The notes under the pieces are model-generated. The model was given only the letters and a program-made list of their open reading frames with translations. It did not search any database and was not told the DNA's origin. From contig NW_026262701.1 in NCBI RefSeq assembly GCF_021869535.1, positions 31,806,001 to 31,870,000 of the forward strand: a stretch of 64,000 bases of DNA. Direction: 5' to 3'. The translations under genes and the position numbers were made by a program. Below are positions 4,003 through 54,300 of the stretch, piece by piece; within the stretch, counting starts at the first letter, position 1; each line of letters begins with the position of its first letter. Source of the stretch: Mytilus californianus (taxonomy: Eukaryota).

Positions 4003-4662
4003 TGAATAAACTGTTGACACAGAGATATGTCTCGCCTGTCCGCATAAAATTCAGAAAAAGACAATCTGATGGACAGCAACATTGATTATAAATTCAAAGT
4101 TGCTGGACCATGATCTTGTGGGCTAGGTCTAGAAATGCCTCAAAAAAGCCAGCAAACAGATATGTACTGATAGTAATGCAACACCATACAAAATATCATT
4201 GATCTATCGCAAGTAGATCTTATCAAACTAACTCAAGCAGAAAACTTAACATTGAATATTACTTATTAATTCTAAGTCACTGGACCACGATCTTGTGGGC
4301 AGGGCCTAGAAATGGTTGACAAACTGAGATGTACAGATAGTAATGCGACTTCATACAAAATATCATTGATCTATCACAAGTAGAACCTATCAAACTAACT
4401 TAAGCAGAAAACTTAACATTGAAAATTGATTATTAATTCAAAGTTGCTGGAACATGACCTAGGGGGCAGGGCCTCGAAATAGTCGTCAAATTGATATGTA
4501 CTGATAGTAATGCAACTTGATATTAAATATCAATGATCTATCACAAATAGTTCCTATCAAACTAACTTAAGCAGAAAACTTAACAATTTTTGACGCCACC
4601 GTCGCAGCAGGAAAAACGATCCCTATGTCTCAATTTCCACGACTTTCGTCGCAGGCAAGACA
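4003..4662. mobile_element. HINE-like element with three internal repeats of about 175 bp
   Basis: Starts AATAAACTGTTGACACAGAGATATGTCTCGCC; units begin near 4092, 4270 and 4436; ends with a GTCTC..GCAGGCAAGACAA hairpin. Confidence 0.65.
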
Positions 4663-5726
4663 ATAATCTGCTCACAAAAGTATGTTGGTTTACAGTAGTG
4701 TGTTTACATAAACCGAATCTTTAGTTCCAACCAATTTGATACTTATCAGAAAGTCGATCATTTCAATATTAGGGCCTTTAAGAAAGGATGTATGGCAAAG
4801 TTATTGAAATAATGAATGAGAGATCATATGTTTAATATTTTTATTCATCCTAAAATATCTTTGTCATGGTGAGAATATTAATGAATGAATCACAGAAGCA
4901 CATAATAACAAAATACAAAATGTAAACATGTTTATGAAATGTATAACAATTAGGTACATGAAAATATGAAAATTACTATTAAATCAAATTGTGTTCAGAA
5001 TGAATCTTATCAGTCTTAGGTCTATTGTACTTTACTAATGAATAGGTTTAATTCTAATTCAATAAACAAAATGAAAATAAAACTTAAAAACAACTTTTTC
5101 TGCTAAAGCTTCTTCTATGGGGTCTAGGGTAATGGGTTAACTTCCCAAAAAGAACTCTATATCAAATATCAAACTGTGGATGGTTGTGATTAAAAAAATA
5201 TTGTCCTGCAACACTTATCGTGTTTCAATAGTAGATATTCAATATGTGACAGTACCTAAGTTTTCTATTCTTTATGCAAGATACACAGGATAAAGTATCT
5301 TCCTAATGACAGGTACTTTCCTGAAGAATATCTCCATAAAATAACATAAAAATAACAACATGCTCTTTAATATAACAATGTAGACATTGTGCATATCATT
5401 ACAATTAAAAATAAAATGCTTCGCTGAGTGCAGCCTGATACGACTGCAGATGTCGATCCCTGAACAGTTGGGGCAAGTTTGGACACAATATTCAAGCTTG
5501 ATACTGTCTGAATTTGGATTGTGATCAAATTTTTGACATAATATAGGTTTCTGACACAAAATAAATGTGGTCAAAGATCTTAAAAATCTATTGCGCAATA
5601 CTTTCAATTGAAGATTTCTTCTTGAAACTTTTCAAAATATTTGAAATTTCAAAAATTTTGAAGAAAAAAAATTGGGAAAAAAAGTCCCCCCCCCCCCAAT
5701 CTTTTTGACCACCCTTGGAGTAATTA

Positions 5727-42383: not shown

Positions 42384-45300
42384 ATGAATACAGTCTTAAT
42401 ACCAGATATATACCGGCTTATGTCCGGTCCATACCACAGGTAAGTGTGTTGTTTACTGACATCGATGATCCAAACAACTAGAAGCTAGAAACTTATATAA
42501 CAGAGTGAAATCAGGTGTTAATAAACTGGCAATGAATAGTAAGGCCAAGGAATACCGCAAGACACTTAACATTAACCATCAGCAGTATAAACAAAAATGT
42601 TCGGATGAACTGAGATCACTATCAAAAATGACTCTAAGGGATTTTGGAAGACACTTAAAAAATATTCTGGCTACAAAAAAGACAATCCCTCTATTAGTAT
42701 TGAAGCATTTCATGAATATTTTAAAAACATGAATGCAAGTGACGAAGAAGATCTTGATGGCATTGACATCAATGCGTTGTGTAGTGACCCAATTTATAAT
42801 GAAATTTTAAATGGCGTCATTACAGAACAAGAGGTTGTGGATGCAATTAAGAACTTGAAACATGGTAAAGCCTCTGGTACTTACAGGATACTGAATGAGT
42901 TTTTGAAAAACTCTCCACCATTTTTTATATGTATTTACACTAAACTATTTAATGTGATATTGGATACAGGTATTATACCTGAAACTTGGACAGCAGGAAT
43001 AATTATACCAGTTTTTAAAAATAAAGGTTGTCCAAAGGATCCAGATAATTATAGAGCTATAACATTAATTAGTTGTGTAGGGAAATTATTTACTTCCATA
43101 ATCAATACTCGATTGAATTTTTTTGCAAATGAAATTTCACTTATACATGAAAATCAGGCTGGTTTTAGAAAGGGGTATTCAACTGTAGACAATATGTTTG
43201 TACTTCATGCACTCATAGAGCTGTATTTCTCATTTGGCAAAAAACTTTTTTTGTACTTTTGTAGACTTTCGGAAAGCATTTGATACGGTATCAAGATCTG
43301 GTTTATGGGGAAAACTTCAATTGAGTAATATCAAAGGGAAGTGCTTCAAAGTTATTTTTAATATGTACCAAGGAATCAAATCATCTGTAAAATATAATGG
43401 ATGTCAGTCAGATTTTTCCCCCTGTTTAGCAGGTGTAAGACAGGGGGAGAATTTATCGCCTTTTTTGTTTTCAATTTTTCTTAATGACTTAGAAGACTAC
43501 TTTAAGAGTCTAGATGGGATTCCACTAGAAACTGTAAAAGAGAAGTTTCAAAGTGAATTGCACATATTTTTTGAATTATTTGTTATATAATATGCAGATG
43601 ATACTGTAATTTTATCTGAAACAGAAGAAGGTATGCAGCGATCACTAAAAATTTTTCAGTTATATTGTGAAAAGTGGAAATTAGAAGTAAATTTAAATAA
43701 AACAAAGGTTAATGATTTTTAGAAAGAGGAAAAGCAAAAAGAAATTTAAATTTTTACTGCAAGACAAAGAACTTGAGATTGTTGAAAAATTTTCTTATTT
43801 AGGTGTTACATATGTATCTTTAAATATAACGGTACTTTTTTAGATACCAAAAAGAAAGTTATTGATCAAGCACAAAAATCGATGCATTTTATACATAGAA
43901 TTGTCAGAAACGAAAACATTCCTATAGATTTGCAACTGAAATTATTTGATTCCATGATAGAACCAATTCTTTTATATGGTTCTGAAGTTTGGGGTTTTGA
44001 GAATTTGAAAATTATTGAACAGATGCATTTGAAATATTGCAAAAGAATTTTAAAAGTTCGAAATACTACACCCAATTTTATGGTGTATGGAGAATTGGGA
44101 AGATTTCCTCTGCAAATTCGAGTTAAATGTAGAATGATTTCGTATTGGTGTAAAGTTGTAAACAATAGCAGTAAACTTAGTAGTGCTTTGTACAGGCTGA
44201 TGTTATCATTGAAGAATCATGGTTATTATGCTTTCAAATGGATTGATTCTGTAGAATCAATATTTAGCAACACTGGTCTAGGATACATTTTCATGAATCA
44301 AATTGGCTTTTGTGATAAAAATTATCTCGACCGAATATTGAGTGATCAGTTTATTACCTCATGGTTTGGCGATATAGAAAATTCATCTCGGGGACAATTT
44401 TATGGGACATTTAAAAAGGACTTTGGATTAGAAAAATATCTGATCAGACTATCTGAACAGAACAGAGGGTGGGTAACTAGATTAAGGACATCGAACTTAC
44501 GTATTCCAATCGAGACAGGCCGTTGGCAAAATATACCTAGACCAGAGAGAATATGTACTTTATGTCATAAATTTGTTGGTGATGAATTTCATATTTTATT
44601 TGTATGTCAACATGATTCTATTGTTAATTATAGAAACCAATACTTACCTAGATATTATACTATTAATCCGCAATAAATTAAAATGGAAGGATTATTGTCC
44701 ATATGTAATATGGAAGTCTACAATTAAACGACTATCATCTTTTATTAAGAAAATTGCTTGTTTATTCTAAAATATTTACAAATGTATTTCTATGTGTTTA
44801 AATAGTACTGCATGCTCAATTCGTCATTCAATTGTTTATGTATTATACTTTGACCTCATGTTACACATTTATGTGTCTGAGCGTTATCAATAAATCTTGA
44901 AAATCTTGAAACAAGAAAAAAACGCTAATATTTGATAACCGAAGAATTAGTTTTGGTTAACAAAAATTTGTAAAATTACAGATTATGCTGATTTCTATCA
45001 GCTAGCTTATATAGTAGTCATACGATTTCCTGCTTTTGTGAACATACAGAAGCAGGCAAATCTTCTATGAAAAAAAAACGATAAAAGTACTTTGTAAGAA
45101 ATACAAAATTAGAGATCTTCAGCAAGTAATTTATTGTACTTTAATGAACAATTTAGTTAACTCTCAAAACAAACACAAGTGGACCCTATGTGCTGATTTT
45201 TAATCAAAAGCAGCTACATGGTCTGGATGGGGTCCTTCATTTATTTACTCTGCACATGATTATTCTCTAATCACATCCAGATCCTCAACTAGCGTGCAAT

Positions 45301-48300
45301 TTTAAAATTCTCCTGTACAAAGTTAGTTTAGAATGTTTCCAATTGCAGAATTGATAACTTTACGACTTTGTGCGAAGAGCTAGAAGATCATCTTGATCCA
45401 ATAATAGATGAAGTGCGTATGGAAAAGATGATAAGCATCATGAAAAGATTGAGAGATTATAAACCAAATGAAGGTAACTTTTCGATTGCCAATGAATTTT
45501 ACATATATTAAAGGAGATGTTTTATTATCGAAAAACTATTTACGATTTTTTTTCTGAGAAATCCTGTTTACACAATTATTTTCGTGGGTAATTAATTATA
45601 AATTCCCTAATTTAGTATATACATTGTATTTGCGAGCACGATTTCATTATTTGCCTTCATTAAAAATATTGGTGGTTTATTTTCGGAGATAAATACAATT
45701 CAGTGTTATTATGATGAATTTAAAGTCATATAAATTGTTCTGTCATTAACCAACAATTAGATACGTTGTAACTGACAAGGTGAACTTTTATAGACGACTA
45801 AAAACTTGTGTTTCTAAAATAATTCATCAATGTACAATTTAATATCTTTGCAGTGTTTCCTCAGATGAACGAGTTATTTTACTTGATGACGGAGACGGTT
45901 TTCAGTGTTGTCGAGTCCCAGGAAAATTGGTCACTTTCTGAATCAACTAAGCCATCAGTTGCTCGGATAATTCGTGACAAAGTTCAAAAAATGATAGTGG
46001 GAGGTAGAATTCTACCACATCAAACGTGAGTTTAGATAATTTATATTTCGAATAACGTACTACAAAAAAACCTAGAGGCTCTCAAGAGCCTGTGTCGCTC
46101 ACCTGTATCTACTGTGGTTTTGGAAATCATGTAAAATAAGGTTAAAATCATAATAAATAGTATAAGATACCCCAATAATGATTGAGACGAAGTTTAGATT
46201 AATTTTGCCAAGTAGTTAGATTAAAAGCAGGTCAAACCATTGTAGTCTTACAATAGTTACTGAAGACCCCTTATCATAATTTAAATTTAGTTTTCAAGTT
46301 GTGACCATTTGAAATTGTTTTTTCTACAATTTTCCCATACACTTCTATAGTAAACCCCTATGTTCTATTTTTAACCATGGCGGCCATGTTGGTTGGATGG
46401 CAGGGTCATCGGATACATTTCTTAATCAAGATACCCTATTGAAAATTGTGGCTAAGTTTAATTCTATTTGGCCCAGTAGATTTAGTGGAGAAGATTTTTG
46501 TAAAAGATAACAAAAATTTACGAAAAAATTGTGAAAAATGACTTTAAAGGGCAATAACTCCTGAAGGGGTCAATTGACAATTTTGATCATTTCACTTATT
46601 TGTAGAGCTTACTTTGCTGAACATTTTTGCTGTTTACAGTTTATCTCTATCTATTATAATATTCAAGATAATAACCAAAAACTGCAAAATTTCCTTAAAT
46701 TTACCAATTCAAGGGCAGCTACCCAACTACGGGTTGTCTGATGCGTCAGAAAATTTCAGGGCAGACAGATCTTGACCTGATGAACATTTTTACCTGATTT
46801 CAGATTTGCTCTAAATGCTTCAGTTCCAGAGATATAAGCCAAACTGCATTTTACCCCATGTTCTCTTTTTAGCCATGGCGGCCGTCTTGGTTGATGGGTG
46901 TGGTCAACGGATACTTTTTTTAAAACTTAATACCCTCAGGATGATTAAGGCCAAGTTTGATTTAATTTGACTTAAAAGTTTCAGAGGAGAAGATTTTTGT
47001 AAAAGATTACAAAAGTTTACGAAAAATTGTGAAAAATTGACTTTAAAGAGCAAAAACTCCTGAAGGGGTCTAGATCTATTGACAATTTTGATCATTTGAC
47101 TTATTTGTAGAGCTTACTTTGCTGAACATTTTACACTCATTCTCAATTTAGGGTCGCAATTCTATGTACCGCAGTGTAAAAGACATATTCAACCACAGAC
47201 TTGTACATTTTTATATATAGTCGGATAGGGGATACCGGTGCGGAGATAGAAATAATTGTTTTCCACATGTAACTCTCACAATTTAAACAAAATCCAGCTT
47301 TATGAACGTCAAAAACAGTATTTACGTTACTGTCCACGGCAAGGTATCAAATTATTAAAATCTCAGTCTCGTGTTATTTGAGTTATTTGTGCACAAAAAA
47401 TTCTGCAGTTATTTGAAGAATTATCATACTTTTCAACTGATACTTGTAAAATGCATACACATATTAAAAATCAGATTGAAACGAACTCTAAATTTCCAGT
47501 GTCACCAAGTCCAAACTATTTGAATTAATGTGTTTCTTAAACGACATTAGCACTGCATTAAATGTAGTTATAGTAAACAAAACCTATTTGTTTTATTCCT
47601 TAGACACATTGTTTTAGCTGACAAATATCAAATATTGCAAAGTTGTTCTGTTCACATTGATTTTGCATTTTTTTCCATACCAAGGATCATGGTTATAAAA
47701 ACAAGGGATATTTACGTGTTGCACGACACAACAATAACACATAACTCAAATGTCAACAGTTCTTAGTTATTGGAGAGGTGGAAGTATATGTACAATTTTG
47801 ACATCTGTACTGTCTTCTACATAAACAGTTAGTATTAACAACGAATTACTATCTAGCCAAAAATATTTACGTTACGGATATTTACGATACAAAATATACC
47901 TTTGGAACGGACCCAGGTACTGATCATCATTTTAGCACTTTTCAAAAACAGCGTCTATGACGTCATTGTTTAACACGTTGTTTACAAGATTTCATGGCGT
48001 TACATATCCATACATTACAGTAGAGAGATAAAAGCAAATAGAAGAGCAAGGTAACTATGACGATGTTTGATATATATTTTTTCTTACGTTTTGAAATAAA
48101 CTGATGAAGTAGAAGTTTAATTGTATTCCATGCTTAGTTCTTGTCATTTTCAAATACACTTTTTGTACTGATTATTTACACAAGTTAATTGAATGGGGAA
48201 AGTATTTACGTTACGATTGGGTAACGTAAATATTTTACTAACTATAACTGAATTATAGAGTGAATACAATAAAAAAAAAGTTGTCTTTGTGATTTTAAAG

Positions 48301-51300
48301 TTGGTTTATAGATATATGATGCTAGTTTCAGTGGTTAAAATTCATAGAAATGAATGTTTTTCTACTGTAGCTGCATTAAAAAGATGCGTAGTAATGCTAG
48401 AATTGTCGTGGAATTTCACCATTAATTAAGCAATCAAATCAATAAAACGTGCTAAAAATGCATCTCAACATTTATATTATGCTATATCAAGATAACAAAA
48501 TGAACAAAAAACAATACATACAAGTTTACCAATTACTACAACTAATCTGCCTTTGGGTCTAATTGTAACGTAAATATCAAAATTTTATTATATTGCTTAA
48601 AGGTAAATTTTTTATTACATTATTATAACATACATTATGTTTACCTAACTAGACTTCTTATTATTCCTATCTTCTTTCAAAACAAAGTGTTTGCTAATAT
48701 AGTTCATATTTTGATATCACTAAATTAACATAAAACTGGAACATTATAGTTCAGTTTGATGCAAAATGTACTCCTTTTGCAGGTATACATGGCTAAGTCA
48801 CGAAGTCAAATCCAAAAAGAGTACAGAGAGAGAAAGAAATTGAAAGAGGGAAAGAATTATTTAAAGAAAGAATCAGCCAGGGTGATTAAATACTATGTTC
48901 CAGCAGCTGAATTGCCAACTAAGGAAAGAAAAAAAAGAAACGAAAGAGCAAAAGTCCACAACCAAACACATAGACGCAAAAGAAATGCAGCAGCAATGGT
49001 TTTGAATGAATCTGTTACAGAAAGCAGTGGTTATGAAAGTATAGGTAGCCCATTGGTGGTAAAGTTGCCACTTGTTGGAAGGAGGAAAGGAGGAAAAAAG
49101 AAAAATACAAGAGCTTTAGCTAGAGCCCATGGTGCAATGAAGCTTTTGAAAGTAGAAAAGGAAAAGCTTCTGAAAAAATTAAAAGCAAAGTCCAGACAAC
49201 TGAAAAGGCTCAGCACTAAGATTAATTCCGGAACTAGAAGGCCATCTGAACCTTGTACACCTAACAGCAAAACTGAATTAGAACTGAGAGAATTAAATTT
49301 GACACCCAGAAGAAGAGAGAGGGTAAAGCGAAAGTTAATGTTGAAGAATGTGGTGTTGCACGAAATTTCAGAAGCAAGAGCTTCAACTTCGTCCATGTAT
49401 GAGAGACAGTCCATAGCTAGACTAGTGTCTGGAAAGTTGTCAAAGAAATACAGACTCAATCTTGCTATAAGTAAAGGAACTGGTATATGTAGAAAGACTT
49501 TGACAAAAGTGTCCACAAAGCGGGTAAGACCAGACAGACGTATTTGTGCAGTCAAACAGCTTGCTTTAGATGTTGAAGATTTCATGAGCAGAGAAGATAA
49601 TAGTCGCATGCAACCAGGAAAAGGGGATGCAATTAAGATTTCGAAGGGAGAAAAGAAGCAAACAATTATTCTAACAAATTATCTTGCTGATCTACATAAG
49701 AAATTTTCTGTAGAAAACCCTCAAGTGAAAATTTCGTTGGCAACCTTTTGTCGTTTACGTCCACGCCATATCTTAACAGCAAAGTTCATATCCCGAACAT
49801 CCTGCCTATGTATAAAACATCAGAATATGGCCCTCAAGTGTCAGACACTTAAGAAATACAACATTTTCGTAAGAGAAAATCCTGAACACTTAATAGGTCA
49901 AAGTCTTGAAATAGAGCGTTCTATGGACCAGCTGCTAGAAAATCGAGTGGCTTATCGAGTATGGAAACAAGTCGCTGTTGAAGATAAAAAGAAAATGAAG
50001 ATTATAGAAAATACAGTAGAGAAGAATGAATTTATAGAGATGATGAAAGTTGAAATGAATCAGTTTGCAAGTCACGTTGACAGAGTACGGTGTCAATATA
50101 GAGAAATCAAAACACTTAAAGATAGCCTTAAAGAGAAAGAAATTTTAGTCCAAATGGACTTTGCAGAGAACTATTCGTGTAAGTCTCTTGCAGAGGTACA
50201 GAGTGCCTATTGGAACCAAACCCCAGTCACCATACACCCAGTAGTTGTATATTTCCGTGGCCAATCAAAATTAGAACACAAAAGCATCGCAATAATTTCT
50301 GATGAACTTTCTCATTGTACCAGTACAGTGTGCAAATTTCTTGATTCTTTAGTTCCAGTCTTGAAGGAAATCTGTCCAAATGTCGAGTTTGTCCACTACT
50401 GGACGGATAGTCCATCAAACCAATACCGCAATAAAACCATTTTTGACCTCGTTGCAAATCATTCATCAGTTTATGGAATTCAGGCCCGTTGGAATTATTT
50501 TGAGGCTGGGCATGGCAAGGGACCTTGCGACGGTCTTGGTGGAACAATCAAAAGAATGGCTGACGAAGCAGTGAAGAGAGGAGCAGTTGTTATTCAAGAT
50601 CCAAAAGAATTTCTTGATTGGTCTATAACTTCAAACATGAAAGAAGTGAAGTTTTTGTTTGTAAAAAAAGAAGATTGCAAGAAGAAGCTCGACCAACTAA
50701 ATAAACTAAAGCTGAAGCCAATTAAAGGAACAATGAAGTTTCATGCTGTAGCCTATGACTTACAGACGGCCGAACTTTGCACCAGAGAAACCTCATGCTA
50801 CTGTGACACATGCTTGAAAGGGAAATTCTGTGAATCCTGGAATAGACAGACATATGAAGGTAACACAAATCATAACAGTCACACAGAAGAAACAGTCACA
50901 CAAAACGAATTGCAAGAAAGTAATGAGATCCAAAATGAAGATTATCATGAAATAATAATAGTAGAAGTGTCAGTGGATGACTTTATTGTATGTGTTTATG
51001 AAGGTCAGTGGTACATCGGGAAAATTTTAGATATGGACGACGAAGATGTACAGGTTACCTTTCTCGAAAGAGCGAAAGCTATGTTTAGGTGGCCAACTTC
51101 ACCTGACACGATATGGTGCAAAAAATCAGACGTCTTCTATAAACTTGATCATCTAGAGCCTTCCGGCAAGAGCAAACGCTTTTGGAAAATAAGCCCAGAG
51201 GACAGAACTAGAATTGAGAACAACTTTGAAGCTCATGAAATGAACACAAATAAATAAAACATATTTGTTGAATTGTTTAACATGTTTGATGCATAATCTT

Positions 51301-54300
51301 TGCATTTTGATATTTACGTTACCAATTAAAAATTTGAAATTTTTGTCTCTTATTTGATGGTAGACAAATGTCTGAGTTGATAAATTCGTTGTACATTCAT
51401 TAAAAAAACTTTCAATGTTTCAAGTCAGAATTTCGGATTAAAATTTTATAAGTTAGATTATTTATATTTACGTTACCTTTACACAGGTCTATGAAAAGTT
51501 TAAAATATCTACCATGCCAACATTTCTTTGGGAAAACCTTTTTCATATTTCATTGCAATTATTCAAAAAAAGGTATCAGCCATAAATTGTTTGCTTACAA
51601 TGCATTGAACAGAGAAAAAAAATAAATCAAAGAAAGTGATTTTATAGAGTAAAAGGAACAGCTACAGTTTAAAAACGGACCCAGTTTTGATTTGGCTGAT
51701 TCGGTCATATGAATTTCGGACCATGGTAATCAGAAGTGAATTTGAAAGTCAAAACTGTTGTTCTATTTAGACAACTCAATATTTTGAAGTATTTTGATGA
51801 GCATTGGCTTTATTTAATATGTTTAAAACAGTCAGTTGCAGATCACGTAAATATTTTGTCAAAAATTGGACATTAAAGGCGCCAAAACTAAGAGCTGGTA
51901 AATTTTTTATCCATGTTTGTGAGTAGAAAAGAATAGCAGTTTTGATTAACAGGTTTATTTAGGTATAATGTATGAAAGGTTTTAATGTAATTTTGTAACC
52001 TTTATTATAATTGATTTAAGCATATGCCTTAGCCACCTTAACTTGAGAATGAGTGTTTAGCTATTTACAGTTTATCTCTATCTATTATAATATTCAAGAT
52101 AATAACCAAAAACTGCAAAATTTCCTTAAAATTACCAATTAAGGGGCAGCAGCCCAACAACGGGTTGTTTGATGCGTCTGAAGGTTTCAGGGCAGATAGA
52201 TCTTGACCGGATGAACATTTTTACCTCCATGTCTGATTGTCTCTAAATGCTTTAGTTTCAGAGATATCAGCAAAACTGAATTTTACCCCCATGTTCTTTT
52301 TTAAGCCATGGCGGCCATCTTGGTTGATGGGCGGGGTCATCGGATACATTTTTTTAAACTACATACCCTAAGAATGATTTAGGTCATGCTTGGTTTAATT
52401 TGGCCAAGTAGTTTCAAAGGAGAAGATTTTTGCAAAATATAACAAAAATTTACGAAAAATTGTGAAAAATTGACTTTAAAGGGCAATAACTCCTTATGGG
52501 GTCAATTAACAATTTTGGTCATGTTTGACTTATTGTAGATCTTACTTTGTTGAACAATTTTGCTGTTTACAGTTTATCTCTATCTATTATAATATTCAGA
52601 TAATAACCAAAAACTGAAAAATTTCCTTAAAATTACCAATTCAGGGGCAGCAACCCAACAACAGTTTGTCTGATGCGTTTGTAAATTTCAGGGCAGACAG
52701 ATCCTCACCGGATGAACATTTTCATTCCTGTCATTTCATAAATGCTAAAAAAGATAGTTTCAGAGTTATAAGCCAAAAACTGCATTTTACCCCCATGTTC
52801 TATTTTTAGCCATGGCGGCCATCTTGATTGATGGTCATCGGATACATTTTTTAAACAAGATACCCTAAGGATGATTTACGCCAAGTTTGGTTTTATTTTG
52901 CTCTGATTAAGTGATGAGAAAAGCTCACTTGGCCCATTGATAAACAGAACCTGATAGTAATCTCTGTGTTCAAGTGAATTCTTTGGTAATTTAGGGTATG
53001 ATTTAGCAATCGAACTTCATCTTATTTGTATTCCAATACAGTTCTGTTGAATTTCAGTTTAACGGAGAACAAATGCCACGAGCGGTATAAACATGTAAGA
53101 GAATACAAAGAGGTACAAGATCTAAAGAAATTGATAGAGGAACACAAGGAAGTTTATCAGGAACTTCAGAAACAACAAAAGGTAAAATAACGAGAACAAT
53201 ATTGATATTTAGTAGGGATGTCAAAATTGGGGTCACCGGGCCCGTTTTCATGCTACATAATAAAATAGATAAATTCCTAACACATTCTATTGTAAAAGTA
53301 ATTTTATCTGAATTATCTGCCCTTGCATTTCAGTTGCCTCCCCTTATGTGGCAAAGTTGGAAAAAATTGAACCAAACAAAAGTATTCTGTTTTTTGTAAA
53401 ATACAACCATAAATATAATAAAACATGTCATTTTCTATATTAATATGAAAATTCATACACATGAATTACCCACTTCTCTCAAAATTTGCACATTTTATTA
53501 AAGGTCTAGACCGATTATTTTCTGGTATTTCAAAATCCAAGATGGAGGAAGACACCCTATCTACCCTATTATCTTCCAAGACTATAATGTATGAGCGAAA
53601 TTTTTAGTCGTATTTTGACAAATTTTTGTGACCCATACAGACTATGGTAAATGCTCATTGTTCTTGAATATTAACCCTAACACAAATTACAATTGCCTCT
53701 TTAAATTATAGTTTGTCTTCACTTTAACAATAGAATAGAATCAGTCTCGATTCTGTAGTGGTCACACAAAATCTCGATTCTGTAGTGGTCAGACAAAAGA
53801 TTAATCTGTTTATTTACATATGCTATTTCAGATATGATTATTAATATAAAGTTTTGAATCCTATCAAAATCTCAATTTTTTATTACTTTTGACTAGGAAA
53901 ATTTGAATGCTAGCTTGTTGGATATTGATTTCAAATAACAGATGACGAACTAACTTCGCATTCATAATGGTATTGAAGTGCAGAGACGTGATGCACAATT
54001 GTTTTAATTTTGAAGACAACAAATTTGATCATTGGATAGTTTTTTTCTTTTTTTTTCTTCAGAAATGTTGGATTATCAACGACAAAGTGACAGAAGCCGC
54101 AGACAAACTTATGGGTCAAAGAATCTACTTCGTAAGAAAGTCAGACACATTCTCGCTGCAAACTGGAAGGTTGCGAAGAGATTTCATTGACTTTCTTCAA
54201 GAGAAATATGAGAGTAAGATGGAGAAAGCTGCTGAGACTGCTGGAAAATATCAGACTTTGCTTCATGACGAAAGTGTTGCCAAAGATAAAGTTAGACAGG

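What the first reader, a model, noticed from the sequence alone, without database searches (positions are those of the whole stretch)
47134..52055. Intact transposon pairing a Sola2-like DD40D transposase with CAC...GTG termini
Seen: complete TIRs, a perfect TTTA TSD and an unbroken ORF, so it is probably recent and possibly active. Recalled: DFxENY / DxxxxQYxN / HGKGPxDG motifs are Sola2-type, whose ends are usually described as GRG, while CAC ends with a 4-bp TSD are typical of Chapaev (CMC). The combination may mark an undescribed subgroup. The family assignment is from memory and needs checking.
Basis: partly seen in the sequence, partly recalled or inferred. Interest (0 to 1): 0.74.

Follow-up and report, generated by a model that had tools for sequence, protein, structure and literature searches.

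The report
Young Sola2 transposon with CAC ends
This is an intact, recently multiplied 4.9-kb cut-and-paste jumping gene of the already known Sola2 kind in a mussel-like genome. Its CAC...GTG ends are shared by relatives in other marine animals, so it is a new family member, not a new kind of element.

Summary
Window 47134-52055 is a 4922-bp element with a perfect 13-bp TIR (CACTCATTCTCAA), a TTTA duplication on both sides, and one unbroken 822-aa ORF (48789-51257).

The genome holds 11 full-length copies. They differ by 0.74% on average, and 4 have the intact ORF, so the family spread very recently.

The protein is a Sola2 transposase. It has no Pfam family, but its catalytic core lines up block for block with the published Sola2 references (Sola2-1_HM, a sea-urchin protein, dictyostelid DFa-2 and PPa-1). 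It has a D-82-D-40-D triad on a compact RNase H fold; the nearest solved structure is Mos1 (Z 9.7). It is not a CMC/Chapaev protein, although the ends and TSD length match Chapaev's hallmarks.

The CAC (or CAG) end is not special to this element. Relatives in clams, oysters, a brachiopod and amphioxus share it. They also share a stereotyped ~5-kb layout and an array of CGTTAC-core repeats at conserved distances from the end.

Whether Repbase or Dfam already list these ends could not be checked. The verdict is a new member of a known kind, of modest interest. Two oddities remain: about half of the young copies lack a clean TSD, and the window copy carries a substitution at a nearly invariant core residue.

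The parts
47130..47133 (.). Left target-site duplication, TTTA
   Evidence: Paralogous empty sites of the host repeat hold 4 letters here.
47134..47158 (+). Left terminal inverted repeat. 13 bp are perfect (47134-47146, CACTCATTCTCAA). It is followed by a second conserved block, G-GCAAT, at about 47153-47160.
   Evidence: I3: 25 nt, 88%. CAC is invariant and C24/A25 are nearly invariant across 12 ends from 6 lineages.
47320..47330 (+). First subterminal ATTTACGTTAC repeat, 187-197 nt from the left end
   Evidence: 8 copies inside the element against 1.9 expected in the whole window; the same position (180-192) holds in 5 lineages.
47865..47890 (+). Two adjacent repeat copies (47865-47875 exact, 47880-47890 with one mismatch)
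   Evidence: Position ~740 from the end is conserved in 5 lineages.
48204..48231 (.). Inverted pair of the repeat (ATTTACGTTAC, 6 nt, GTAACGTAAAT), about 1075/1087 nt from the left end
   Evidence: (I16). The same inverted pair lies at 1060-1088 in mussel, L031, Ruditapes, Lingula and Saccostrea.
48565..48575 (-). Repeat copy about 1430 nt from the left end, 214 nt upstream of the ATG
   Evidence: It lies at 1405-1447 in five lineages.
48789..51257 (+). Transposase ORF, 822 aa, no intron. It has an N-terminal basic helical region, a CxC..H block, the DDD core, a CxCxxC...C cluster, a low-complexity linker and a C-terminal beta-barrel.
   Evidence: The start M-x-K-S/T-R-x-x-I-Q is conserved in homologues of 5 other lineages.
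50157..50159 (+). First catalytic Asp (D457 counting the Met; D456 in the alignments) in MDFAENY, at the end of beta-1
   Evidence: Invariant in 48/48 homologues. Fold topology.
50406..50408 (+). Second catalytic Asp (D540) in WTDSPSNQYRN, just after beta-4. The window copy has N where the other copies and over 90% of homologues have S, four residues downstream (S544N).
   Evidence: S543 in alignment numbering is listed as nearly invariant.
50529..50531 (+). Third catalytic Asp (D581) in GHGKGPCDG, at the start of the helix after beta-5. It lies 40 residues after the second Asp.
   Evidence: D in 47/48 homologues..
50796..50831 (+). Conserved Cys cluster, S-C-Y-C-x-x-C ... C (inferred metal-binding)
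   Evidence: C669, C671 and C674 are invariant and C680 is nearly invariant. Function is inferred.
50982..51191 (+). C-terminal small beta-barrel (Tudor/chromo/SH3-like by prediction only)
   Evidence: AF2 strands 731-799, pLDDT about 90. Only sub-threshold Pfam hits to chromo-like and Tudor models in some homologues.
51312..51322 (+). Repeat copy 55 nt after the stop codon
51466..51476 (+). Repeat copy 209 nt after the stop codon
51844..51854 (-). Variant repeat (ATATTTACGTG) about 200 nt from the right end. It mirrors the first left-end copy.
   Evidence: Ruditapes and Saccostrea carry a copy at the same place.
52031..52055 (-). Right terminal inverted repeat. 13 bp are perfect (52043-52055). 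The window copy has A where all other copies have C at the 18th base from the end.
52056..52059 (.). Right target-site duplication, TTTA

Best explanation
The element is an autonomous class II (cut-and-paste) DNA transposon of the Sola2 group of the Sola superfamily. It belongs to a low-copy family that spread very recently in this mussel-like genome. The 822-aa protein is the transposase. Its compact RNase H-like core uses three Asp (D457, D540, D581) to cut the element at its CAC...GTG ends. It joins the 3' ends to target DNA with a 4-bp stagger, whose repair gives the 4-bp, mostly AT-rich duplication.

Shown here: the structure, the copy set, the youth of the family, homology of the core to published Sola2 proteins, purifying selection between lineages, and conservation of the ends and internal repeats.

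Inferred: the chemistry (from the DDE/D fold), and that the CGTTAC-core repeats flanking the ORF are transposase-binding or regulatory sites, perhaps read by the basic helical N-terminus. Whether the family still moves is also inferred. The window copy may be a weakened source of enzyme because of S544N beside the second Asp, but its ends are intact, so it could be moved in trans by the other intact copies.
For: TIR, TSD and ORF are at the stated coordinates. There are 11 full-length copies with identical boundaries and unrelated flanks. Mean pairwise divergence is 0.74% and 152 of 169 variable sites are singletons, which points to a burst. The ORF is intact in 4 copies, has an in-frame 15-bp deletion in 1, and is broken in 6.

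The empty-site length of 4 comes from paralogues of the host repeat. The protein has no Pfam family, as reported for Sola1-3 (PMC5751038). The core is collinear with Sola2-1_HM and S. purpuratus XP_003724602.1 (PMC3985635 supplement). The shared blocks are DFAENY, E-x-QS-x-x-W, HP-x-V-x-Y, ISD-x-x-x-H, TD-x4-QY[KR]N and WN[FY]F-x3-HG. A by-eye count gives about 41 identities in about 120 residues. The core is also collinear with Sola2_DFa-2 and PPa-1 (PMC3627910 supplement; D-to-D spacings 87/43 against 83/41 here).

A 4-bp AT-rich TSD is the published Sola2 feature. The AF2 core model has pLDDT 89 and pTM 0.86 with canonical RNase H topology. Its best structural matches are Mos1 (Z 9.7), Metnase (8.9), Sleeping Beauty (8.6) and retroviral integrases (8.2-8.6). 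D457 and D540 are invariant and D581 is kept in 47 of 48 homologues. Against a 72%-identical relative, dN is 0.21 with synonymous sites saturated (pS 0.81), while the TIR is still 12/13 identical.
Against: No formal E-value or tree links the protein to Sola2. The published Sola2 sequences could only be read as text, and Repbase and Dfam were not available. The ends are CAC...GTG, not the GAG/GAA seen in the dictyostelid Sola2 families.

There is no sign of transcription: an RNA run of the same species label gave almost no reads on the ORF (only about 6% of the run was read, and the tissue is unknown). No insertion polymorphism or excision footprint was seen. Only 5 of 11 copies have a clean 4-bp TSD. 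The window copy has 6 non-synonymous against 2 synonymous private changes, one at a nearly invariant core residue.
Confidence: 0.85

Rival explanations
1. One reading: the element marks a distinct, not yet described subgroup of Sola2, defined by Chapaev-like CAC...GTG ends combined with the Sola2 DD40D core.
For: All ends determined in this clade are CAC or CAG: window family, L031, Ruditapes, Lingula, Saccostrea, Branchiostoma, and paralogue families B, C and D. The only published Sola2 ends readable here are GAG...CTC and GAA...TTC. All public homologues are unnamed and carry no Pfam domain.
Against: The clade is large and widespread: 409 clusters were found by the word search alone, across molluscs, a brachiopod and amphioxus. 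Sola2 elements with checked TIRs and TSDs have already been curated from bivalves (14 families; PMC10294476), and Repbase holds Sola2 entries for oyster. The founding Sola2-1_HM core is about 34% identical to this protein. That is close enough that the classical animal Sola2 may well have the same ends. The terminal trinucleotide already varies among published Sola2 families.
Confidence: 0.25
2. It is a CMC (Chapaev) transposon, as the CAC...GTG ends and the 4-bp TSD would suggest.
For: Chapaev hallmarks are a 3-4-bp TSD and invariable 5'-CAC...GTG-3' ends (PMC4079192). Both are met here.
Against: The protein has no hit to any CMC Pfam family, even at E up to 1, and none in 48 homologues. The third catalytic residue is Asp, only 40 residues after the second, with no insertion domain. 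The core matches Sola2 references block by block.
Confidence: 0.02
3. It belongs to a separate DDD superfamily that merely resembles Sola2 around the catalytic residues, for example a mariner/Zator-like lineage as the nearest solved folds might suggest.
For: The best structural matches are Tc1/mariner cores (Z 9.7-8.6). No formal sequence statistic against Sola2 was obtained. A structurally similar but separate family, DUF7869, exists in the same genome.
Against: Similarity to Sola2-1_HM extends over six or more collinear blocks well outside the three Asp, with matching spacings. The TSD is 4 bp, not TA or 3 bp. There is no Pfam hit to mariner, Tc1 or other transposase models. Z values of 8-10 are what any compact RNase H transposase or integrase gives.
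Confidence: 0.06
4. The family is already dead: the copies are relics of one short burst and none is mobile now. Alternatively, the intact ORFs are kept for a host function.
For: There is almost no RNA coverage. Six of 11 copies are broken. The window copy changes look neutral (6 non-synonymous, 2 synonymous). There is no MITE family and few solo ends.
Against: Copies lie 0.2-0.5% from their majority sequence. Four have full ORFs and perfect ends. All intact ORFs sit inside complete TIR-bounded elements at unrelated sites, which is not the pattern of a domesticated single-copy gene. A second species label also carries the family, 1-3% different.
Confidence: 0.3

Closest known systems
Sola2-1_HM (Hydra; Repbase reference of the Sola2 group, Bao et al. 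2009), as reproduced in Majorek et al. 2014, family E.12
   Same: It has the same collinear core blocks: DFAENY is identical, and E-x-QS-x-x-WN, HP-x-V-x-Y, ISD, TD-x4-QY[KR]N and WN[FY]F-x3-HG are shared. About 34% of about 120 core residues are identical by eye. It has no Pfam family.
   Different: Its ends, TSD and overall layout could not be read here. Identity outside the core is unknown.
Sola2 elements DFa-1/2/3 and PPa-1/4/5 of dictyostelids (Bao and Jurka 2013, PMC3627910)
   Same: They have 4-bp AT-rich TSDs (AWWT; ATAT, AAAT, ATTT), short TIRs of 12-22 bp, and a transposase of about 888 aa. The blocks MDF-x-EN, SD-x-L-x-HC, W-x-D-x4-[FY][KR][SN] and HGK-x-x-x-D occur at near-identical spacing.
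   Different: The ends are GAG...CTC or GAA...TTC, not CAC...GTG. The elements are 10-15 kb and carry a Fanzor gene, whereas this one is 4.9 kb with a single ORF.
Curated bivalve Sola2 families (Martelossi et al. 2023, PMC10294476)
   Same: The host group is the same. These are autonomous elements with TIRs, TSDs and ORFs over 300 aa that match a Sola2 profile. Fourteen Sola2 consensus sequences are reported.
   Different: Their sequences lie beyond the stored part of the supplement, so identity with this family and their ends could not be checked.
Chapaev (CMC superfamily)
   Same: It has invariable CAC...GTG ends and a 3-4-bp TSD.
   Different: Its transposase is an unrelated DDE protein with CMC-specific domains. 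None is detectable here.
Mos1 / Tc1-mariner catalytic domain (nearest solved structures)
   Same: It has a compact RNase H fold with a short spacing between the second and third acidic residues and no insertion domain (Z 9.7, rmsd 3.5 over 163 residues).
   Different: There is no detectable sequence similarity. Its TSD is TA and its signature is DD34D/E. Its DNA-binding domains differ.

Membership tests
Sola2 (Sola superfamily) | DDD transposase whose RNase H-like core carries the Sola2 signature blocks | tested here: met
   The blocks and spacings match Sola2-1_HM, S. purpuratus XP_003724602.1, DFa-2 and PPa-1. The DDD triad is conserved in 47-48 of 48 homologues. The comparison was made by eye on published text; no E-value was obtained.
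Sola2 (Sola superfamily) | 4-bp target-site duplication, AT-rich | tested here: met
   The window copy has TTTA. Other copies have ATTT, GTCT, ATAT and ATAT. The paralogous empty site has 4 letters. However, 6 of 11 copies are irregular.
Sola2 (Sola superfamily) | Short terminal inverted repeats bounding a single transposase gene | tested here: met
   The TIR is 13 bp perfect and 25 bp at 88%. There is one ORF.
   The ends are CAC...GTG. It could not be verified that this is a defining feature, because the original description is not held. DFa-1 has GAA...TTC, so the ends vary within Sola2.
Sola2 (Sola superfamily) | Groups with Sola2, not Sola1 or Sola3, in a tree of reference transposases | not testable with these tools
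CMC / Chapaev | CAC...GTG ends and a 3-4-bp TSD | tested here: met
CMC / Chapaev | DDE transposase with CMC-specific conserved domains (Pfam Transposase_21 and relatives) | tested here: not met
   There is no such hit at E up to 1 for this protein or at E up to 0.1 for 48 homologues. The third residue is Asp, 40 residues after the second.
Tc1/mariner (ITm) | TA target duplication and a DD34-37E/D core recognised by the mariner or Tc1 Pfam models | tested here: not met
   The TSD is 4 bp and the core is DD40D. There is no Pfam hit and only fold-level similarity.

The most novel reading that the evidence does not exclude
Metazoan Sola2 elements of this clade may form an undescribed, unusually stereotyped lineage with four shared traits. 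They have CAC/CAG ends like Chapaev and RSS/Transib. Their length is fixed at about 5 kb. They have a bipartite TIR (CAC... plus GCAAT). They carry an array of 13-nt repeats with an invariant CGTTA(C) half and a lineage-specific half. These repeats sit at conserved distances from the end (about 185, 575, 745, an inverted pair at 1075/1087, and 1430) from bivalves to a brachiopod, and partly in amphioxus. Synonymous sites between lineages are saturated, so the repeats would be co-evolving transposase-binding sites. The window family, with four intact copies, would be a first practical candidate for showing Sola2 transposition experimentally.
Probability: 0.3. Interest if true: 0.5.

Novelty: new member of a known kind. 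Interest (0 to 1): 0.3.

Why it matters
To my knowledge, Sola transposons are known only from sequence. No Sola transposase has been shown to work, and Pfam has no model for them. A family with four intact copies, perfect ends and under 1% divergence is a realistic starting point for an excision and integration assay.

Such an assay could also map the binding sites, for which the position-conserved CGTTAC-core repeats are obvious candidates. For genome annotation, the family and its many paralogues explain a set of "uncharacterized protein" gene models in molluscs, brachiopods and amphioxus. They also explain at least one contig filed under a bacterial MAG.

The similarity of the ends to Chapaev shows that terminal trinucleotide plus TSD length is not a safe classifier on its own.

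Tried and rejected
- **Family and sequence scans.** Pfam scans of the protein and of 48 homologues gave nothing significant. A PDB sequence search with a core profile gave nothing. An ESM-Atlas feature search returned only unnamed clusters plus one carrying DUF7869 in 12% of members. The C-terminal part gave no usable hit.
- **DUF7869.** I tested it as a possible name for the family. It hits 150 other places in the genome but none of the places that this transposase core hits, so it is a different family.
- **Fold search.** Foldseek with the whole 821-residue model gave only weak RNase H-like rows. The domain model was needed.
- **Literature.** The original Sola paper and Yuan and Wessler 2011 are not held. 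The Sola2 alignment figure of PMC3627910 was unreadable. The bivalve library is cut before its Sola2 entries.
- **Formal alignment left out.** I did not align or profile-compare against the published Sola2 sequences. They exist here only as text without a reference, and I did not type them in.
- **Paralogue families.** Only the 3' ends of three families could be read from loci already held.
- **Reads.** Joints that skip the element in RNA and DNA runs come from the thousands of paralogues of the host repeat. I rejected them as evidence of excision or of an empty allele.
- **Missing TSDs.** The flanks of L005 gave no paralogous empty site. L003 did.
- **Other scans.** Rfam and tandem-repeat scans of the element found nothing. 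No MITE family shares the 20-nt ends.


Full report
**Observation**

CACTCATTCTCAA at 47134-47146 is matched perfectly by its reverse complement at 52043-52055. The inverted repeat extends to 25 nt at 88%. TTTA lies immediately outside both ends.

One long ORF runs on the + strand. Its conserved start is the ATG at 48789 and the stop is at 51255-51257, giving 822 aa. My alignments used 48792-51254, so their residue numbers are one lower than the numbers given here. MDFAENY, WTDSPSNQYRN and GHGKGPCDG are present. The three Asp lie at codons 50157, 50406 and 50529, with 82 and 40 residues between them.

**Copies in the genome**

The window's own assembly (1.65 Gb) holds ten more full-length copies at 98-99% identity. 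One of them is split by a 597-bp insertion. There are also some older fragments. A 20-nt end pattern finds exactly the 22 ends of these 11 copies plus about seven solo or old ends. There is no MITE family.

All copies begin and end at the same bases and have unrelated flanks. Mean pairwise divergence is 0.74%. Each copy lies 0.2-0.5% from the majority sequence, and 152 of 169 variable sites are singletons, which is the pattern of one recent burst.

The ORF status of the copies is as follows:
- Four copies, the window copy included, have the full 822 codons.
- One copy has an in-frame 15-bp deletion.
- Two copies have 1-bp deletions.
- Three copies have premature stop codons.
- One copy is interrupted by the 597-bp insertion.

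The window copy differs from the majority at 6 non-synonymous and 2 synonymous sites. One of these is S544N, at a position conserved in over 90% of homologues and four residues after the second catalytic Asp. "Unbroken" is therefore true, but "active" is not assured for this particular copy's protein.

**Target-site duplication**

The flanks of the window copy belong to a very high-copy repeat. Reads and contigs from its many paralogues join position 47130 to 52060 with three letters between. They therefore have 4 letters where this copy has 4 + 4922 + 4. This confirms the ends and a 4-bp duplication. These joints are paralogues, not excision products.

Across the family the picture is untidy:
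- Five copies have a perfect 4-bp TSD (TTTA, ATTT, GTCT, ATAT, ATAT).
- L007 has a 3-bp repeat.
- L009 and the C99 copy have a 4-bp repeat displaced by 4 and 2 extra nucleotides. This is weak evidence, because allowing offsets makes chance matches likely.
- L003 carries 7 extra nucleotides on one side and 2 on the other, relative to 9 of 10 paralogous empty sites.
- L002 and L005 show nothing.

At 0.4% divergence, point mutation cannot explain this. I leave it unexplained. Candidates are donor-flank or filler nucleotides at integration, recombination between copies, and assembly joins.

**What the protein is**

Pfam has no model for it or for 48 homologues. This agrees with the published statement that Sola1-3 lack Pfam families (PMC5751038). 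No solved structure is similar in sequence.

Public databases hold at least 409 related clusters. One from Mytilus galloprovincialis is 95% identical. Others at 43-54% come from many bivalves, gastropods, Lingula and Branchiostoma. All are unnamed.

Two papers reproduce Sola2 reference proteins in their supplements. Majorek et al. 2014 give the RNase H core of Sola2-1_HM and a sea-urchin relative. Bao and Jurka 2013 give Sola2_DFa-2 and Sola2_PPa-1. The window protein lines up with them block by block and with matching spacings:
- F-x-[KR]-x-x-P ... RT-x-x-C
- MDF-x-EN(Y)
- E-x-QS-x-x-W(N)
- HP-x-V-x-Y
- (I)SD-x-x-x-H(C)
- [FW]-[TS]-D-x4-[QH]-[YF]-[KR]-[NS]
- W-[NQ]-[FY]-[FS]-x3-HG(K)-x3-D

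By eye I count about 41 identities in about 120 core residues against Sola2-1_HM.

AlphaFold models (whole protein pLDDT 81; core residues 380-700 pLDDT 89, pTM 0.86) show the canonical RNase H order. The three Asp sit at the end of beta-1, after beta-4, and at the start of the helix after beta-5. An exhaustive structure comparison puts Mos1 (Z 9.7), Metnase, Sleeping Beauty, retroviral integrases and IstA on top. This is a compact transposase/integrase core without an insertion domain.

Outside the core the model shows a long basic helical N-terminus, a conserved CxC..H block, a CxCxxC...C cluster and a C-terminal beta-barrel. Tudor- or chromo-like assignments for the barrel rest only on sub-threshold Pfam hits in a few homologues.

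**Ends and architecture in relatives**

I fetched elements encoding homologues from an unnamed Logan contig (72% identity), Ruditapes, Lingula, Branchiostoma belcheri and Saccostrea. Each is 4.9-5.2 kb with one intronless ORF of 768-850 aa, and each is bounded by CAC...GTG:
- L031: CACTCATTCTCAG
- Branchiostoma: CACCCATTCTCC, with an ATAT duplication
- Lingula: CACTCAAAGTC
- Ruditapes: CACTAGTGAGG
- Saccostrea: CACTAATAAGC

In an alignment of all 12 ends, CAC is invariant and a second block (GCAAT, at about 20-27) is nearly so. Three paralogous families in the window's genome end in ...CAGTG or ...GACTG. The clade's rule is therefore CAS...STG.

All lineages also carry a 13-nt repeat. Its right half, CGTTAC, is constant (ACGTTA in Patella). 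Its left half is lineage-specific: ATATTTA in the mussel, ATACATA in Ruditapes, TAACATA in Lingula, TGACTTA in amphioxus and AAATGTT in the oyster. Copies sit at conserved distances from the CAC end: about 185, 575, 745, an inverted pair at 1075/1087, and 1430. At least two more follow the stop codon.

Between the mussel element and its 72% relative, synonymous sites are saturated (pS 0.81) while dN is 0.21. The non-coding DNA is unalignable except for the TIR and these repeats. The ends and repeats are therefore under selection. I infer that they are transposase-binding or regulatory sites. This is not shown.

**Comparison with what is known**

A 4-bp AT-rich TSD is a published Sola2 feature. 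It is not borrowed from Chapaev. But the protein has nothing of a CMC transposase.

The only Sola2 ends I could read are those of the dictyostelid families. They are GAG...CTC for DFa-2/3 and GAA...TTC for DFa-1. The terminal trinucleotide therefore already varies within Sola2.

Sola2 elements have been found and curated in bivalves (105 ORF-level elements and 14 curated families; PMC10294476). Their sequences are beyond the stored part of the supplement. I therefore file the element as a new member of Sola2. I leave open, at about one chance in four, that the CAC-ended metazoan clade has not been described as such.

**Activity**

The evidence for recent movement is the copy set itself. A second species label in public runs also carries the family, 1-3% different from the window copy.

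A transcriptome run of the same species label gave almost no reads on the ORF. Only about 6% of it was read and the tissue is unknown, so this is weak evidence of silence. No polymorphism or footprint data could be obtained.

**Limits**

There is no Repbase or Dfam comparison, no formal statistic against Sola2 references, and no further genome letters. The reads tool could be used only once.

Noticed in passing
window 46634-47130 and 52060-52555: Both flanks of the element belong to one very high-copy dispersed repeat, with summed contig depth 10^4-10^5 times that of the element in four runs. The transposon is nested in it. RNA reads of this repeat are abundant and mostly on one strand.
   Followed up: partly
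window 42729-43283 (+), also 43882-44676: An ORF carries a sub-threshold reverse-transcriptase match (RVT_1, E 3.5e-6, 27.3 bits against a cut-off of 29.6). It is probably a decayed retroelement upstream of the transposon.
   Followed up: partly
L011, about 4365-4962 (G000:C99:18682030-18682625): One copy of the family is interrupted by a 597-bp insertion at element position about 2060. It may be a nested small element. It was not classified.
   Followed up: no
G000, many places, e.g. C108:823157-823891, C154:28591931-28592668, C154:1498942-1499610: The genome holds at least 146 matches to this transposase core, in many families at 25-54% identity. Several have multiple near-identical copies and open frames of 835-1200 aa, so several Sola2-like families look young.
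   Followed up: partly
G000, 150 places, e.g. C98:2349590-2350156: Pfam DUF7869 is abundant in this genome, mostly in exon-like pieces. By predicted structure it resembles this transposase core (TM 0.71), but it marks a different set of loci. It may be another unnamed transposase family.
   Followed up: partly
L067 (GCA_040505915.1, contig JBEVXV010000096.1, 4867 bp): A contig filed under a bacterial MAG (Sedimenticola sp.) consists of a member of this eukaryotic transposon family. It has an 840-aa ORF at 48% identity and the same GAAACATACGTTAC repeats. It is probably host-animal DNA binned with a symbiont.
   Followed up: partly
L003 1494-1500 and 6428-6429; L009 and L011/L012 junctions: Extra nucleotides lie between the transposon ends and the duplicated target in some very young copies, and two copies have no detectable TSD. 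See the notebook entry under 'unexplained'.
   Followed up: partly
window 48040-48790: There is a possible 5' UTR intron. A donor-like AAG|GTAACT lies near 48050 and an acceptor TTTTGCAG|GT lies at 48783, six bases before the ATG. No RNA reads were available to test it.
   Followed up: no
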